A DNA stretch of 63,841 bases, counting the filler, from Octopus bimaculoides (taxonomy: Eukaryota): assembly GCF_001194135.2 (NCBI RefSeq). It is 6 parts of 6 records of this genome, joined end to end, with 100 filler letters (N's around TTAATTAATTAA, not from the genome) between each part and the next. Parts side by side here need not be neighbours in the genome. Positions count along the whole stretch, not along the records: positions 34,686 to 58,399 come from NC_069004.1; 5 more parts are not named here. The stretch is one strand, 5' to 3'. Each line of letters opens with the position of its first letter. Position 1 is the first letter of the stretch. A model generated the notes under the pieces. The model saw only the letters and a program-made list of their open reading frames with translations, did not search any database and was not told where the DNA came from. A program made the position numbers and the translations under genes. This document shows, one piece after another, positions 36,973 through 53,396 of the stretch.

Positions 36973-38451
36973 TTATGGTCTTTCCTCATTTAGATTGATA
37001 GTTTCTTCCTCATTCGAAGAAGTTTTAATCGATTTTTCATCAGATTCAGCCCAATCTTGTACATCTCCACGCGCGAATATCGCATAGATTATTGTCCCAC
37101 ACACAGAAAATATGGCACACAGTGATAATGCTATCTGCCATTCTTGCCGTGTTCCATTAGGTGTTAATGCTTTCGTTGTTAAAGGCGCCAGAAAGCCAGG
37201 CAACGCCGCGAAAGTATTGGTAATTCCGTACAATATACCAGCGTATTTAGGAGCAATGTCAACATGATTGACAATGAAACCCCCTACATAAAATGTTAGA
37301 ATCATCCCAGTAATAAAGAAAAGAATTCCGGCCAATGTCGTTTGGTTGCAATCAAGGAATCCGATCACGATAATCAGAGACGCTGAACCAATGTAAGAAA
37401 CTGACTGGAAAAGAACTCGGATGGATCGTGTTGAAAGATAATTCTTTGAACGCAAGAAGTCTGCAAATCTTCCACAAAATGGTATAGCAATCATTTGTCC
37501 AATAAACGGAGCTGAAGACATTAAACCATTTGATTTCGAATCGATACTTAACGCTTCTTTCATATACAATGGCAGAATCACTTGGAAAGAAAAAATAGTC
37601 CAGTTAATAAATGTATGCGCCATAATGATGGCCCAAACGGCTGTAGACGTCATGATGCTTTTCCAAGGCACGTTCTTAACTTTACTTTTACATTTTATTG
37701 TTCTGTTTAAGTAAGAACGTTCTTCTTCGCTGATAGTTGGATGGACGTTTGGATTATCATAAACAACATAAATCCATACAAAGCTAAACACCAACGATAA
37801 TCCACCAAATACATAGAATATAGAACCCCATCCATTATCAAAGCCATAAACACAAAGAAAACCAGACATTGACAGTCCTACAATACTACCGACTACTTGA
37901 CCTCCGAGTGAAATCCCTATCAAAATACTATTTTCACTAGGTGGAGCCCACCTTCCCCATAGGGATTGTATAGCAGGGCACATGGGCCCTGAAACCAGAC
38001 CTGTAAGTATCCTCAATACGAGAGTAAAATAACCACTAATTCGTGTTAGACTTGGGTGGAGAACGGTCAGGACAGAAGCTGAGAATATGGAAGCCCCCAT
38101 AACTTTTTTTCCACCATATTTGTCAGCTAATACACCGCCAAGAAGGTTAGTCACAATGTAGCCATAAAAGTATCCAGCCAACATGTTTGATTGTAGAGTA
38201 TTGCTCCATTCGAACTCTCCTTCAAAATTTTCTCCATTTGATGTACGATTGTCTAAACGAGAACAGTGTTCGTTATCTAGAGTAAGGTCGACTTCATCAA
38301 TTGTACGATTGGGTGTTTTCAACATACAAACTAACGACATACTCAGGTCTACACGTAAAGTCTGCATGAGAAGCAAGGTGAAAAAGCTAACATAGCATAG
38401 CCGCCATCGACATGAACAATAATGGCTGACAAATTTGGTAAACTTCGACAT
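36973..38451 (-). CDS. SLC17A5-like: SLC17/sialin-like anion:cation symporter (MFS), paralogue 1, single coding exon, 492 aa
   Basis: Intact ORF; first ATG at MSKF, homologous to the paralogue starts. Motifs LRVDLSMSLV, YFYGY, GGVLADKYGGKK, WAPPSE, GWGSIFY, VPWKSI and NHVDIAPKYAG. Confidence 0.95.
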   Translation of the reverse strand: MSKFTKFVSHYCSCRWRLCYVSFFTLLLMQTLRVDLSMSLVCMLKTPNRTIDEVDLTLDNEHCSRLDNRTSNGENFEGEFEWSNTLQSNMLAGYFYGYIVTNLLGGVLADKYGGKKVMGASIFSASVLTVLHPSLTRISGYFTLVLRILTGLVSGPMCPAIQSLWGRWAPPSENSILIGISLGGQVVGSIVGLSMSGFLCVYGFDNGWGSIFYVFGGLSLVFSFVWIYVVYDNPNVHPTISEEERSYLNRTIKCKSKVKNVPWKSIMTSTAVWAIIMAHTFINWTIFSFQVILPLYMKEALSIDSKSNGLMSSAPFIGQMIAIPFCGRFADFLRSKNYLSTRSIRVLFQSVSYIGSASLIIVIGFLDCNQTTLAGILFFITGMILTFYVGGFIVNHVDIAPKYAGILYGITNTFAALPGFLAPLTTKALTPNGTRQEWQIALSLCAIFSVCGTIIYAIFARGDVQDWAESDEKSIKTSSNEEETINLNEERP

Positions 38452-38719
38452 TTTCTCTGCGTGTTCCAATTGTATTCTCAGAGTTGTTTTAATTCTTTTC
38501 TCCCTCAGCAAGTCTTATACACAGCAAGATCTCATACACTAACTATATCATGCATTCCGTAATTGTCTCAAAAGATTTGAACTATAAAACGACGGGTAAC
38601 TGCGTGCAACATCACGACATTCAGATAATATATTCTCGGTAAGTTTTGTCGATTGGGTTGCATTAATACCAGAAAATTTTCATGACTTGAAGTTATTTTG
38701 TTTTTTGTGTGCTGGTCAA

Positions 38720-38745
38720 TCTGTAATTTTAAAAGAAAAAAAATA
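38720..38745 (-). promoter_or_regulatory. 3' splice acceptor in the 5' UTR of paralogue 1
   Basis: ttttttttcttttaaaattacag|ATTGACCA; exon start shared with paralogue 2. Confidence 0.65.
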
Positions 38746-39658
38746 TATAGCATTATCAAAAAATAATTTTATTGTTTTCTTAGATTAAAATAACCCTTTT
38801 TATTTATATAAACATGACAAAATACAAATGCTGTACTTTACAAAATTTACAATATTTGATCCATCGATCTACATATTTCTTTATATTGTCACTTAATTTA
38901 TCCGTTCAGCTTTTCACTTGATTCTAAAGGGTCCACTACGCTGCAGATATGCAACTCTCAGGTCTGTGGATATCATATCCTTCCCATCACCTTATAAAAC
39001 TTGGGTGATGTCTTTTCCTCTTTTTACTAATCTATATAAAAGAACATTTTTACGGGACGAACTAAAATCCCTTAGCCTCCCAGTCATAAAATTCACTAAT
39101 CATTCGATGTTATTCCCCCCAAATCTTTAATCTCTCAGTCATCTACGCGAAGGTTCTGGTAAATCTTGTTGGACTAAAATTCGTTAGGAAGTCCTAATAG
39201 GCCCAATACGTTTCTTTAGCCACCACAGAACTTTCAAAAGATCCGGTTCACACGTAGTTTATATCACATCCCTGCTTCATTGATCACGATTGGAGTGAAG
39301 GAAGGAGAGTTCTGTTTTGTAAAGAGCAAACCATTATATAGCTTCGAAAGGGAGATAACTGCAATAACCTAATATACGTACAATTATTCATACTCAACAA
39401 TTATTTTACCCGAATTTGTGAAGACCAACCGGTGCGCATGATTAAGATTTACTTGTTAGTCAAATTAGCAACAAAAATAATGTGATTCAAGCATGCGATA
39501 CAAAGGCAATATAAACAACAGTTCAGCATAACGGACGTCTGTTATGTATGTATATATATATATATATATATATACCGACATATGTATGTATGTATGTATA
39601 TTATATGTATATATTATATATATACATATATATATATAATATATACATATATAATATA

Positions 39659-39697
<39 letters not shown>

Positions 39698-39759
39698 GTA
39701 TTACAGAAAAATTCAATAAAGATTACGCTCGCGAATACAAGAGGCTGGAATGGGATTCT

Positions 39760-40115
39760 TCTGAAGGATTTCTGAAGTAACGGTACTGAGGAGGGTACGT
39801 CACTCGAAGAGCAAGGTGTCTCTCCAGTTTGAGCCGCGTTACTTCTCTGCATGGGGAGGTCCAGATCGATGGACATGTGACTAGAATGTGACGGAAGAAT
39901 CACAAGACGAATTCTTCCTTCAAGCCGAGTTACCTTGCAGGAGACCTAGGGGTAGACTTGGAACGACATGTTTGGATACTGTCCGTAGTTTCAATTGGTC
40001 GCGCTTGATAATCCGGTTGAAATGTGTTGCTTCTAAGAGGATTCTATGGAGAAGAAGCCTGAAGATTTTGATGCCCACGACCTCCGTAGAAAGAGTGAGC
40101 ACAGAAGATGGATAT
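39760..40115 (+). mobile_element. RTE LINE 3' fragment
   Basis: GHVTRM and QAELPCRRPRGRLGTTCLD..WSRL..VASKRILWRRSL. Confidence 0.7.
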
Positions 40116-40629
40116 TTGGAGAATATAGAAATAAAATTTAAAATTTATATTTTAGCGTATGTAGCAGCATGACCTGAAACTAGGATTCTAAGAATATCTT
40201 GTAACTTAAATTATGTGAAGTAGATTACTTGATATGATGACGCGAAATCAGTGCATATAAAATGCCATAGTTATCCATTTATAAAGTTCAAACATTTATT
40301 TTGTTTTCTTTTCGAAGTTGAAGCAGTTAGAAACCCGATATTTAATTGTAGTCGAAATGGCAATCGTAGAAGACATGAACATCATCTTATCTCTCCTATA
40401 AAATGACACACTCAAAGAAAAAAAAAAGGTAAACCGAAACTAAACAGCTTTTTACGGACGGTAGGAGTTAAAAGAGAAATAAACACATGTATGAAAATAA
40501 AATGAGAAATTTACGAAAAAATAATTCTTCTGTTGCTATTTGGAAGTGCACCAACATCGGCAATAAATATATAACGCACCGACTAAAACTTTCTGCTTCT
40601 CTTTTTTTAAATAATAGGTGGGCTTTGAA

Positions 40630-40810
40630 GGCGGCAGCGTACTGGCACAATGGTTAGCACACTAGACGAAATGCTTAGTTGCGTTGTGACGTTCTGAGTT
40701 CAAATTCCACCGTGGTCGACTTTGCCTTTAATTGTTTCGGGGTCGATAAAATAATTACCAGTTGAACACTGGGGTTGAGATAGTCGATTTATCCCCCAGT
40801 ATTACTTGGA
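40630..40810 (+). mobile_element. SINE family B
   Basis: Head and core motifs. Confidence 0.75.
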
Positions 40811-51911: not shown

Positions 51912-51945
<34 letters not shown>

Positions 51946-52097
51946 CATCTATATAAATATAAACAAACTAACATTTGTCTTTTTTTTTATAAGCGTTGTA
52001 ATGTGTATTGTACGATACAAAAGAGATGGGGGTTTTTTAACACAGAATTGCCGTTAGAACAGCTTTGTAATGGTAATTTACCCTGTATTCCAAAGTC

Positions 52098-52310
52098 GGT
52101 GAGCTGGCAGAAATGCTAGCACACCGGGCGAAATGCTTAGCGGTATTTCGTCTGTTTTTACGTTCTGAGTTCAAATTCCGCCGAAGTCGATTTTTTACCT
52201 TTCATCCTTTCGGGTTGATGAATTAAGTACTAGTTGCGTACTGGGTCGATCTAATCGACTGCCCCACTCCCACAAAATTTCTGGCCTTGTGCCTAGAGTC
52301 GAAAAGAACT
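52098..52310 (+). mobile_element. SINE family B (full length)
   Basis: GGTGAGCTGGCAGAAATGCTAGCAC head through GGCCTTGTGCCTAGAGT tail. Confidence 0.85.
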
Positions 52311-52859
52311 TACCCTGTATTCCTGTTGTTCTAACGGCACTTCTGCGTTCGAAAAAAAATATCCTCTTATTTGTATCGTACAATATAAATATATTTCCAA
52401 TGAGTTTCTGGTAATTAGTTTGGAAAAACAAATCTCCATAAAATATAATCTATCTTTCTAGATCTCCACTGCCTCATCTTCAGGCTCAAGAGATATTACA
52501 TTTTTTTTTTTGTCGTTTAGCAGTAGGAGACACAAGTAATATCGATTAGTGCTGACATTTACGACAATATTTCAATTTTTGAACGACAGACTACTACGTC
52601 AGACTACTACGTCCCTGAGAAGGTTGTGGGGGTAGGGTCCTCCTTCTTGGTCTACCCATGGGTCTCCTACCAGTTGGCTGGGTTTGAAGTATCCGTCATG
52701 TGACTCTTTCCGGCGACAATCTAACTGGTGGGGGGGGGGATTTTATTTTTGGGGGTGTTGCCCAAAATTTACGAAAAAAATACTATATAATGTGGGGATC
52801 GCAATTCGTAACAAATGGACCCATTTTTGTCTTCTAACTTTGTTGTAGCAGACCACATG

Positions 52860-53215
52860 CAAATGAAAGAGTAATGCTGTGAAACTGATGGAAATAAATC
52901 TAGGTCCCGATTTATTTGATGTCGGTTCGGCTAGAAAGGGTGTTGCCAGGGCAACTGGGGTAACACTTCTGCATCCGCCATTGATCTAATTACATGACAG
53001 ACGTGTCGGCTCCGTGACCATTCATTTGTGGAAAAGTAACTACTCGACCTGGCGAGATTCTCTGATCACCAAGCTACGCATTCCTGTCCAGTGACATTAC
53101 TTCAGTGACTCTTCGCAGAAACGCCATTCCGGTTGTTCGTATTCGCAATCGCACCTGTTCGGCCAGTACCCCACATTCATGACCAGGTGTGTAGTATGAA
53201 CGCTGGAGTACGAAG
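52860..53215 (-). mobile_element. RTE LINE relic
   Basis: PGHECGVLAEQVRLRIRTTGMAFLRRVTEV resembles the 5975-6100 fragment. Confidence 0.6.
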
Positions 53216-53276
53216 AAACGCGCATTAAAGAAATGGACAAAAAAACGACAACATTAGCAAGCGGATAAGCAGCAGC

Positions 53277-53356
<80 letters not shown>

Positions 53357-53396
53357 CAGCAGCAGCAGCAATGCTAGTGATGCGTCTTACCTTTAA

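What the first reader, a model, noticed from the sequence alone, without database searches (positions are those of the whole stretch)
36973..53391. SLC17 array may be a set of splice-selected whole-CDS cassettes fed by a shared upstream leader
Seen: paralogues 1 and 2 each start with a strong 3' splice site followed by the same exon start (cag|ATTGAYCA at 38720 and 44756), although the rest of their 5' UTRs is unalignable. An upstream non-coding exon is therefore needed. Between the paralogue-2 acceptor (44756) and the paralogue-3 stop (48271), nearly all DNA is transposon-derived (AAT-tailed repeat, R4 piece, SINE, plus-strand Gypsy), leaving almost no room for a private promoter and first exon. 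Inference: the leader may lie upstream of paralogue 3, so one promoter would choose among complete transporter ORFs by alternative acceptor or polyA choice. This would be the mirror image of the variable-first-exon clusters (clustered protocadherins, UGT1). Caveat: a cryptic GTAAGT donor exists in the R4 piece near 45197-45202, and a TE-derived promoter is possible.
Basis: partly seen in the sequence, partly recalled or inferred. Interest (0 to 1): 0.75.

Follow-up and report, generated by a model that had tools for sequence, protein, structure and literature searches.

The report
Octopus sialin-like gene array, spliced leaders
This is a tandem array of intact, single-coding-exon sialin-like transporter genes in Octopus bimaculoides; each carries an inherited splice acceptor and so needs an upstream non-coding exon, but the DNA alone cannot show whether the copies share one leader and promoter.

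Summary
The piece comes from Octopus bimaculoides chromosome CM046624.1. It holds three intact minus-strand SLC17/sialin-like genes with uninterrupted coding sequences. A fourth lies just downstream, outside the piece.

P1 and P2 each have a polypyrimidine tract followed by cag|ATTGAYCA, at 38720 and 44756. This acceptor is inherited, not a coincidence:
- Homologous acceptors sit upstream of two O. sinensis paralogues.
- A diverged form sits upstream of P3 (exon start 50615) in three species.
- These sites rank among the best acceptor-like sites in each locus.

An upstream non-coding exon is therefore very likely.

Most of the P3-P2 interval is transposon DNA, as claimed. However, the ~290 nt just upstream of the P2 acceptor is not shown to be repeat, and it holds the best donor in the piece (CAG|GTGGGG, exon end 44875).

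A candidate shared leader exists upstream of P3: donor AAG|GTAAGA, exon end 53391. The donor is kept in O. sinensis, but its conservation is no higher than background.

RefSeq isoform labels hint that neighbouring paralogues are sometimes joined into one gene, but this evidence is ambiguous.

The shared-leader cassette model is possible (about 0.2) and unproven. RNA junction data would settle it.

The parts
36973..38451 (-). P1 coding sequence, 492 aa, uninterrupted, SLC17/sialin-like MFS transporter
   Evidence: ORF found. Pfam MFS_1 E 1.9e-44. Exact product is on record in the O. bimaculoides genome. dN/dS against P2 is 0.25.
38452..38720 (-). P1 5' UTR part of the coding exon. It starts at acceptor cag|ATTGACCAGC (AG at 38722-38721) and has 7 upstream ATGs.
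   Evidence: Sequence read. Acceptor rank 48 of 916. UTR homologous to O. sinensis Osi_A (z 7.7) and Osi_B (z 4.8).
43132..44613 (-). P2 coding sequence, 493 aa, uninterrupted
   Evidence: 93% nucleotide identity to P1, confined to 43140-44616. dS against P1 is 0.176.
44614..44756 (-). P2 5' UTR part of the coding exon. It starts at acceptor ccag|ATTGATCAAC (AG at 44758-44757) and has no upstream ATG.
   Evidence: Sequence read. Acceptor rank 11 of 916. Recovered at E 1e-3 by a profile trained only on the O. sinensis acceptors.
48271..49764 (-). P3 coding sequence, 497 aa, uninterrupted
   Evidence: The orthologue in O. sinensis is P0124 (dS 0.177).
49765..50615 (-). Putative P3 5' UTR exon part. 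It starts at the conserved acceptor ctctctgttcag|GTTAACGGAAAC (exon start 50615). It is 851 nt long with 14 upstream ATGs, so it may be spliced further.
   Evidence: Acceptor rank 2 of 916. The site is kept in Osi_P3, Osi_P3dup and the third-species contig L005. uATG count.
44757..44875 (-). Candidate 118-nt private mini-intron for P2. Donor CAG|GTGGGG, with the last exon base at 44875.
   Evidence: Top-ranked of 1433 GT sites on the gene strand. No other copy of 44624-45045 in the held loci. Use is not shown.
45197..45202 (-). Its exon-side context is poor (TTT|GTAAGT).
45430..45596 (.). SINE copy followed by an (ATT)n run
   Evidence: More than 20 matches in the held O. bimaculoides and O. 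sinensis loci.
45640..45687 (-). P3's ancestral poly(A)-signal cluster (AATAAA three times). The LTR element has displaced it 2.6 kb from the stop codon.
   Evidence: Homologous to the sequence directly after the stop in Osi_P3 (L004 11538-11594) and L005 (2495-2532). AATAAA list.
45688..48037 (+). Plus-strand LTR-retroelement remnant (Gag DUF7083 and integrase fragments). It is bounded by 105-nt direct repeats at 45688-45792 and 47933-48037. The TATAAAT reads on the plus strand, antisense to the transporters.
   Evidence: Both repeats are also present in O. sinensis (L004 17659-17763 and 18373-18477), so the insertion predates the species split.
42782..43061 (-). Orphan internal fragment of a paralogue coding sequence, about 70 nt downstream of the P2 stop
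   Evidence: 80% identical to P1 37256-37532 and 78% to P2 43418-43694.
38994..39169 (-). Block 275-450 nt upstream of the P1 acceptor, homologous to the regions upstream of P4 (35208-35374) and Osi_B (L003 about 9063-9250). No conserved donor. Its divergence fits neutral decay.
53391..53480 (-). Candidate shared leader exon upstream of P3. It ends at donor AAG|GTAAGA (last exon base 53391) and holds a 17-codon uORF. Its 5' limit is unknown because of the assembly gap at 53577-54132.
   Evidence: Donor rank 3 of 1433. CAG|GTAAGA is kept in O. sinensis at L004 4587/4588. No paralogous copy in any held locus. Conservation is not above background.
41670..41794 (.). Assembly gap inside a (TA)n microsatellite. 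Intergenic.

Best explanation
What it is. The piece is part of the octopus-specific expansion of sialin-like (SLC17) transporters in O. bimaculoides. P3, P2, P1 and a fourth gene P4 just outside the piece lie head to tail on one strand.

Shown:
- Each copy is intact and under purifying selection.
- Each copy's whole ORF sits in one exon.
- The acceptor 143 to 851 nt upstream of each ATG (branch-like TTTAT, pyrimidine tract, CAG, then RTYRAY...) is inherited from the ancestral gene. It has been kept in every lineage examined.

Inferred:
- The family founder was probably a processed copy, because the canonical sialin gene spans 48 kb.
- Each mRNA is made by splicing one or more non-coding leader exons onto that acceptor.
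- My best guess is that each cassette is mainly served by a leader and start site in its own upstream interval. For P2 the candidate is an exon ending at 44875, which would give a 118-nt intron.
- Because all the acceptors are alike and the genes are co-oriented, leaders of upstream paralogues sometimes splice across to downstream acceptors. That would yield the cross-paralogue 'isoforms' seen in automatic annotation.
- The near-identity of the P1 and P2 coding sequences, with unalignable flanks, is best explained by gene conversion confined to the coding region.
For: Identity and intactness:
- ORFs and Pfam hits; source genome and neighbours.
- dN/dS 0.17-0.32.
- The canonical sialin gene spans 48 kb for a 528-aa product, against uninterrupted array members.

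Acceptor homology and strength:
- Alignments.
- Acceptor ranks.
- Cross-validated profile search.
- More distant paralogues also have top-ranked acceptors 215-350 nt upstream of their ATG.

UTR splice variants:
- Several RefSeq accessions encode one protein, for example P0124 three, P0003 three and P0017 at least four.

Private-leader candidates:
- The top donor of the piece lies 118 nt upstream of the P2 acceptor, in DNA with no other copy.
- L006 has a perfect AAG|GTAAGT 85 nt upstream of its best acceptor.

Gene conversion:
- P1-P2 dS of 0.176 equals the orthologue dS (0.172-0.177).
- Yet homology stops within a few bases of the start and stop codons.
- Orthologous non-coding DNA of the same age is 88-93% identical.
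Against: - No transcript data could be reached, so every leader is a prediction.
- The 44875 donor (GTGGGG) departs from consensus at +4 and +6.
- P1, Osi_A and Osi_B have only weak donor-like GTAA(A/C)(A/T) about 125-135 nt upstream of their acceptors.
- No homologous private exon 1 is detectable between paralogues.
- P3's poly(A) cluster lies only about 900 nt upstream of the P2 acceptor, which leaves little space.
- RefSeq labels such as 'isoform X1' and 'X2' on adjacent different paralogues would fit a truly shared first exon.
Confidence: 0.5

Rival explanations
1. Shared-leader cassette choice. One promoter and non-coding leader upstream of P3 (the candidate exon ends at 53391) is spliced alternatively to the acceptors of P3, P2, P1 and P4. 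The skipped cassettes lie in the intron, so one transcription unit yields one of several complete transporters.
For: - A strong donor AAG|GTAAGA at 53391 is kept as CAG|GTAAGA in O. sinensis. It is single-copy among the held loci.
- All cassettes keep homologous acceptors.
- The P3-P2 interval is mostly P3 3' UTR plus transposons.
- O. sinensis XP_036368795/796 (P3 orthologue, 'isoform X1') and XP_036368797-799 (Osi_B, 'isoform X2') are numbered consecutively. Neither 90% cluster contains a partner isoform.
- O. bimaculoides XP_052832351 ('isoform X1') and XP_052832352 ('isoform X2') are two different adjacent single-exon paralogues.
- The old model of P4 is 'sialin-like isoform X3', with no X1 or X2 in its cluster.
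- The intact Osi_A ORF is unannotated, as it might be if it lay inside an annotated intron.
Against: - The label argument is indirect. The gene index keeps only the longest product per gene (P0024 'X2' is absent), yet both P0124 and P0003 are on record.
- Conservation of the 53391 block is not above the 88-93% background.
- Private donor candidates exist.
- Joining of tandem paralogues by read-through is a common annotation outcome (own knowledge).
Confidence: 0.22
2. The conserved motif is a core promoter, not an acceptor. A TATA-like TTTATAG or TATATA lies 27-30 nt upstream of the A of 'CAG', which could be an initiator. Each paralogue would then start transcription there, with an unspliced 5' UTR and a private promoter.
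For: - The spacing from the TATA-like element to the CA is -27 to -30 in P3, Osi_A, Osi_B and P1, read from the alignments.
- A short ATGATTYC element upstream is also shared.
Against: - The sense-strand pyrimidine bias between the two elements is kept while the sequence itself changes. The AG is invariant in all copies.
- The sites rank at the top of acceptor scores in each locus. A promoter does not predict that.
- Multiple RefSeq transcripts with identical proteins imply UTR splicing.
- TTTAT also fits a branch site.
Confidence: 0.1
3. P2, or P2 and P1, have no working leader at all and survive only as gene-conversion partners. They would be silent copies whose intact ORFs are maintained by conversion from an expressed neighbour.
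For: - Homology between P1 and P2 is limited to the coding sequence.
- P2's surroundings are mostly transposon DNA.
- No transcript-derived protein fragments of P1, P2 or P3 are in the protein collection.
Against: - dN/dS of 0.25 between P1 and P2, with both ORFs intact.
- P2 keeps a strong acceptor and a UTR free of upstream ATGs.
Confidence: 0.06

Closest known systems
Vertebrate odorant-receptor gene architecture, including leader borrowing between neighbours
   Same: - The whole ORF lies in one long last exon.
- It is preceded by 1-4 short non-coding 5' exons with much alternative splicing, in tandem arrays.
[quoted passage not shown]
   Different: - A different protein family: MFS transporter, not GPCR.
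- Here no transcript evidence was available.
- The acceptor itself is demonstrably inherited across old paralogues.
Cholinergic gene locus (VAChT nested in the first intron of ChAT)
   Same: - A complete transporter ORF in a single exon lies inside the first intron of another transcription unit.
- Multiple promoters and alternative splicing give either mRNA (PMC3053374).
- This is the known precedent for choosing a whole ORF downstream of common 5' sequence.
   Different: - Two unrelated genes, not a series of paralogues.
- Sharing of the 5' exon there is documented experimentally; here it is only a hypothesis.
Variable-first-exon clusters (clustered protocadherins, UGT1A)
   Same: A tandem array of similar exons from which one is chosen per transcript (own knowledge).
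   Different: - In those clusters each variable exon has its own promoter and is spliced to shared downstream constant exons that complete the ORF.
- Here each cassette has its own stop codon and 3' end, and there are no constant coding exons.
Transcription-induced chimeras / conjoined genes between tandem neighbours
   Same: An upstream gene's exon is spliced to the second-exon acceptor of the next co-oriented gene. This often makes annotation pipelines merge neighbours as isoforms (own knowledge). It would explain the isoform labels.
   Different: Because the whole ORF sits behind the acceptor, such a chimera here would encode the complete downstream protein. It could therefore be functional rather than noise.
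Octopus sialin family expansion
   Same: The sialin family is listed among the gene families expanded in O. bimaculoides (Albertin et al. 2015, as cited in PMC6110919). The window is part of that expansion.
   Different: The source I could read says nothing about gene structure, leaders or regulation of the array.

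Membership tests
SLC17 / sialin-like major facilitator transporters | MFS fold domain covering most of the protein | tested here: met
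   Pfam MFS_1 E 1.7e-42 to 1.9e-44, covering residues about 78-424 in all three proteins.
SLC17 / sialin-like major facilitator transporters | Closest named relatives are sialin / slc-17.2 proteins | tested here: met
   All top hits are named sialin, sialin-like or slc-17.2-like from octopods. Bivalve and gastropod sialins follow at 37-47% identity.
SLC17 / sialin-like major facilitator transporters | Anion or sialic-acid transport activity | not testable with these tools
   No functional data were available.
Single-coding-exon gene with spliced non-coding leader (odorant-receptor-like architecture) | Complete ORF in one exon | tested here: met
   Uninterrupted ORFs whose translations equal the catalogued proteins.
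Single-coding-exon gene with spliced non-coding leader (odorant-receptor-like architecture) | Functional 3' splice site upstream of the ATG | tested here: met
   By sequence only: high-ranking acceptor scores and homology across paralogues and species. Use in RNA was not seen.
Single-coding-exon gene with spliced non-coding leader (odorant-receptor-like architecture) | Identified 5' non-coding exon(s) joined to it in mRNA | not testable with these tools
   No transcript sequences were reachable. The only indirect sign is several RefSeq accessions per identical protein.
Shared-leader multi-ORF locus (cholinergic-locus type) | One 5' exon or promoter joined alternatively to different complete ORFs | tested here: inconclusive
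   The candidate leader at 53391 and the isoform labels point towards it. The index result and the private donor candidates point away from it.
Shared-leader multi-ORF locus (cholinergic-locus type) | Downstream ORFs lie within an intron of the longer transcription unit | not testable with these tools
   This depends on where transcription starts and ends.
Variable-exon cluster with constant exons (protocadherin / UGT1 type) | Variable exons spliced to shared constant coding exons | tested here: not met
   Each cassette ends in its own stop codon, and no common downstream coding exon exists.
Processed-copy (retrogene-derived) family | Parent gene has introns and the copies lack them | tested here: met
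   The canonical O. sinensis sialin P0039 spans 48.3 kb for 528 aa. Array members have uninterrupted coding sequences.
Processed-copy (retrogene-derived) family | Poly(A) tract or target-site duplications around the founder copy | not tested
   The founder is too old, and the array has since grown by tandem duplication.

The most novel reading that the evidence does not exclude
One promoter and non-coding leader upstream of P3 (exon ending at 53391) feeds at least four complete, diverged sialin-like ORFs (P3, P2, P1, P4). Selection would be by regulated choice of 3' splice site and poly(A) site. This would be a 5'-shared, whole-ORF cassette array, conserved between O. bimaculoides and O. sinensis, and the mirror image of protocadherin/UGT1 clusters.
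Probability: 0.2. Interest if true: 0.65.

Novelty: new member of a known kind. Interest (0 to 1): 0.3.

Why it matters
- Cephalopod genomes grew largely by tandem expansion of a few families, sialins among them, and how such arrays are regulated is unknown.
- If the paralogues share leaders, one regulatory region could hand out different transporters to different cells. That would be a rare architecture outside the cholinergic locus and some odorant-receptor genes.
- If they do not, the result is still useful for annotation. The inherited acceptor explains why pipelines may fuse neighbouring paralogues as 'isoforms'.
- The coding-sequence-limited identity of P1 and P2 is a clean example of gene conversion bounded by the ORF.

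Tried and rejected
- **Transcript evidence.** I looked up the window proteins and their 90% clusters. Only genomic records exist and there are no transcript-derived fragments. The 483-nt record P0122 is an unplaced genomic contig.
- **Logan contigs L005-L007 as possible cDNAs.** Rejected. They are collinear with genomic DNA through the acceptor, and L005 begins in a microsatellite.
- **The 105-nt repeats with CCAAT, TATA and GCGCATGC as a promoter for P2.** Rejected. They are the LTRs of a plus-strand retroelement, and their TATAAAT faces away from P2.
- **Conservation as a pointer to the leader.** Not informative. O. bimaculoides and O. sinensis non-coding DNA is 88-93% identical wherever it aligns.
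- **CpG or GC islands.** Not informative. CpG observed/expected is about 0.93 throughout.
- **Paralogous private leader exons.** Searches by BLAST, nhmmer and local alignment found nothing beyond about 60-120 nt upstream of the acceptors.
- **ATTGATTAAC 71 nt upstream of the P3 ATG.** It is not preceded by AG and is probably a coincidence.
- **Argonauta 'isoform' labels.** These are names transferred by the submitter and say nothing.
- **Accession numbers in papers.** No hits. Albertin et al. 2015 is not held.
- **Rfam and tRNA scans.** Empty.
- **GC-rich block 39700-40170 as a promoter for P1.** Its plus strand carries a motif I recognise as the tail of a non-LTR retrotransposon ORF ('RRPRGR...', own knowledge), so it is more likely transposon.

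Full report
**Source and content**

The best protein matches and exact-sequence look-ups place the piece on Octopus bimaculoides chromosome CM046624.1, at about 2.61-2.64 Mb. On the minus strand lie three complete ORFs:
- P1 36973-38451 (492 aa)
- P2 43132-44613 (493 aa)
- P3 48271-49764 (497 aa)

All three have a full MFS_1 domain. Their closest named relatives are sialin or slc-17.2 proteins.

A fourth paralogue, P4, lies downstream of P1, outside the piece. Its 5' end falls in an assembly gap.

The sialin family is one of the known expanded families of the octopus genome (PMC6110919). The canonical sialin gene of O. sinensis spans 48 kb for 528 residues, whereas the array members have uninterrupted coding sequences. 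The array therefore probably descends from a processed copy.

**The assembly gap**

- The gap at 41670-41794 lies between the P2 stop and the P1 acceptor. No reading frame crosses it.
- It is flanked by a (TA)n run.
- In O. sinensis a (CATA)n(TA)n microsatellite abuts the same repeat.
- It is therefore most simply unresolved microsatellite. It still leaves the P2-P1 interval incompletely known.

**The observation**

Read on the minus strand, P1 has ...ttttcttttaaaattacag|ATTGACCAGC with the exon starting at 38720. P2 has ...tgttttatttttgattccag|ATTGATCAAC with the exon starting at 44756.

The match is not a coincidence of two sites. The same arrangement is found in other copies:
- O. sinensis Osi_A: tttcag|GTTGATGAAT
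- O. sinensis Osi_B: tttcag|GTCGATGGAC
- P3, in diverged form: ctctctgttcag|GTTAACGGAAAC, exon start 50615. This form is kept in both O. sinensis P3 copies and in a third octopod.

Three further results support an inherited acceptor:
- Homology reaches about 50 nt into the intron side (ATGATTYC, TTTATAGTTYT).
- A profile trained only on the two O. sinensis A/B sites recovers the P3 sites (E 1e-5 to 1e-4) and the P2 site (E 1e-3) as its best non-self hits in about 150 kb. The next hits have E above 1.
- With a simple acceptor matrix these sites rank 1st to 11th (P1 48th) among about 900-1170 AG sites per locus.

P3 and the A/B-type genes differ by dS above 1.5, so the acceptor has been kept for a long time. 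More distant paralogues (P0010, P0013, L006) also have top-ranked acceptors 215-350 nt upstream of their ATGs.

Several RefSeq protein accessions exist for identical proteins of the orthologues, which implies UTR splice variants. I therefore accept that an upstream non-coding exon is needed.

A rival reading is that the conserved TTTATAG 27-30 nt upstream of 'CA' is a TATA box with an initiator. I cannot exclude this. It does not explain the maintained pyrimidine bias, the invariant AG or the acceptor ranks.

**The P3-P2 interval**

- 45688-48037 is a plus-strand LTR-retroelement remnant. It has a Gag-type DUF7083 (E 1e-11) and integrase-core fragments, and is bounded by 105-nt direct repeats.
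- I first took those repeats for a promoter because they contain CCAAT, GCGCATGC and TATA. Their TATAAAT reads on the plus strand, so they face away from P2.
- Both repeats are present in O. sinensis, so the insertion is old.
- The insertion split P3's 3' UTR. The AATAAA cluster at 45687-45663 is homologous to the sequence directly after the stop codon in Osi_P3 and in the third species. P3's ancestral poly(A) site now lies 2.6 kb from its stop and only about 900 nt upstream of the P2 acceptor.
- A SINE at about 45430-45596 has many copies elsewhere.

Two points weaken the 'no room' argument:
- 44624-45045 has no other copy in the DNA I hold, so its repeat status is unverified.
- The best donor of the whole piece on the gene strand lies at 44875: CAG|GTGGGG, 118 nt upstream of the P2 acceptor.

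A related paralogue in the third octopod has a perfect AAG|GTAAGT 85 nt upstream of its best acceptor. This is a precedent for a private leader with a mini-intron.

**A shared leader?**

- O. sinensis keeps CAG|GTAAGA at the same place.
- The block has a 17-codon uORF.
- It has no paralogous copy in any other interval.
- Its 5' side runs into the gap at 53577-54132. A perfect 67-nt duplication sits at the gap edge.
- Its conservation (about 90%) equals the background for all alignable O. bimaculoides/O. sinensis non-coding DNA. Conservation therefore says nothing about function.

Indirect support comes from annotation labels:
- In O. sinensis the P3 orthologue is 'isoform X1' (XP_036368795/796 plus an older accession).
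- Osi_B, 35 kb downstream, is 'isoform X2' (XP_036368797-799). Neither 90% cluster holds a partner isoform.
- In O. bimaculoides XP_052832351 ('isoform X1') and XP_052832352 ('isoform X2') are two different, adjacent, single-exon paralogues.
- The old model of P4 is 'isoform X3' with no X1 or X2 in its cluster.

These patterns are most simply read as neighbouring paralogues joined in one gene model, which needs a shared exon. There are counter-points:
- The gene index keeps only the longest product per gene (the X2 protein P0024 is absent). Yet it lists both O. sinensis proteins.
- Such joins are also produced by occasional read-through splicing.
- The Argonauta labels are transferred names and carry no weight.

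**P1 and P2**

- Their coding sequences are 93% identical (dS 0.176). That is the same as the orthologue divergence between the two species (0.172-0.177).
- Homology nevertheless stops within a few bases of the ATG and the stop codon.
- Orthologous non-coding DNA of that age is about 90% identical.
- P1's UTR is clearly homologous to those of Osi_A and Osi_B (z 7.7 and 4.8). P2's is not.
- The simplest account is older paralogues whose coding regions were homogenised by gene conversion bounded by the ORF.
- Against O. sinensis, P2 with its flanks sits between anchors that are adjacent there: 45842-45620 and 41669-41002 against L004 18327-18543 and 19371-20029. P2 was therefore gained in one lineage or lost in the other.

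**Verdict**

Whether one leader serves several complete ORFs cannot be decided from DNA.

I rate the models as follows:
- Private (possibly transposon-derived) leaders with occasional cross-paralogue splicing: about 0.5.
- A truly shared leader as the main route: about 0.2.
- A promoter at the 'acceptor': about 0.1.

The architecture as established is that of known single-coding-exon tandem families such as odorant receptors (PMC4982115). The shared-leader version would resemble the cholinergic gene locus (PMC3053374). It is not a protocadherin/UGT1-type cluster, because there are no constant coding exons.

Looking at the RefSeq GFF and at RNA junction reads would settle the matter quickly.

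Noticed in passing
window 36978-38454 vs 43140-44616: P1 and P2 are 93% identical (dS 0.176) exactly over the coding sequence, and homology ends within a few bases of the ATG and stop. The flanks do not align, although orthologous non-coding DNA of the same age is about 90% identical. This looks like gene conversion bounded by the ORF.
   Followed up: partly
window 42782-43061: An orphan 280-nt internal fragment of a paralogue coding sequence lies about 70 nt downstream of the P2 stop. It corresponds roughly to residues 307-398 and is 78-80% identical to P1, P2 and Osi_A. It is a relic of a partial duplication.
   Followed up: partly
window 45640-45687 and 45688-48037: An old plus-strand LTR-retroelement insertion, shared with O. 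sinensis P3dup, separates the P3 stop codon from its ancestral AATAAA cluster by 2.6 kb. No AATAAA lies within 1.4 kb of the stop.
   Followed up: partly
window 53397-53463 and 53510-53576, next to gap 53577-54132: A perfect 67-nt direct duplication abuts the assembly gap. O. sinensis has a single copy. This is probably an assembly artefact at the gap edge, and it overlaps the candidate leader exon.
   Followed up: partly
L003 1302-2783 (O. sinensis CM016882.1): An intact 493-aa paralogue ORF (Osi_A), 88% identical in protein to P1 and P2, is absent from the called genes and from the protein collection. It appears unannotated in O. sinensis.
   Followed up: partly
L001 about 13770-15353 (just below window 34686): The 5' UTR, acceptor and first 28 codons of the fourth paralogue P4 fall in an assembly gap of the chromosome-scale assembly. 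The current model is therefore 463 aa, whereas the older model (P0130) is 491 aa.
   Followed up: partly
window 49765-50615 and 38452-38720: The putative 5' UTRs carry many upstream ATGs: 14 in P3, 7 in P1 and 0 in P2. P3's 851-nt UTR contains a segment of about 500-660 nt that is missing in Osi_P3 and the third species. Further UTR splicing or poor translation seems likely.
   Followed up: no
window 41414-41651 and 57281-57499: Two assembly gaps (41670-41794 and 57514-57652) sit at the same edge of copies of one repeat family, next to a microsatellite. Further copies lie in L003 and L004.
   Followed up: no
L012 10001-11692 (O. sinensis unplaced contig VCDQ01004784.1): A paralogue whose two RefSeq isoforms (495 and 487 aa) differ only at the C-terminus. 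The longer one spans 1692 nt, which implies an intron of about 204 nt at the 3' end of the coding exon.
   Followed up: partly
window 39538-39707: A palindromic microsatellite-like stretch, self-complementary at 81-87% identity, lies about 800-1000 nt upstream of the P1 acceptor.
   Followed up: no
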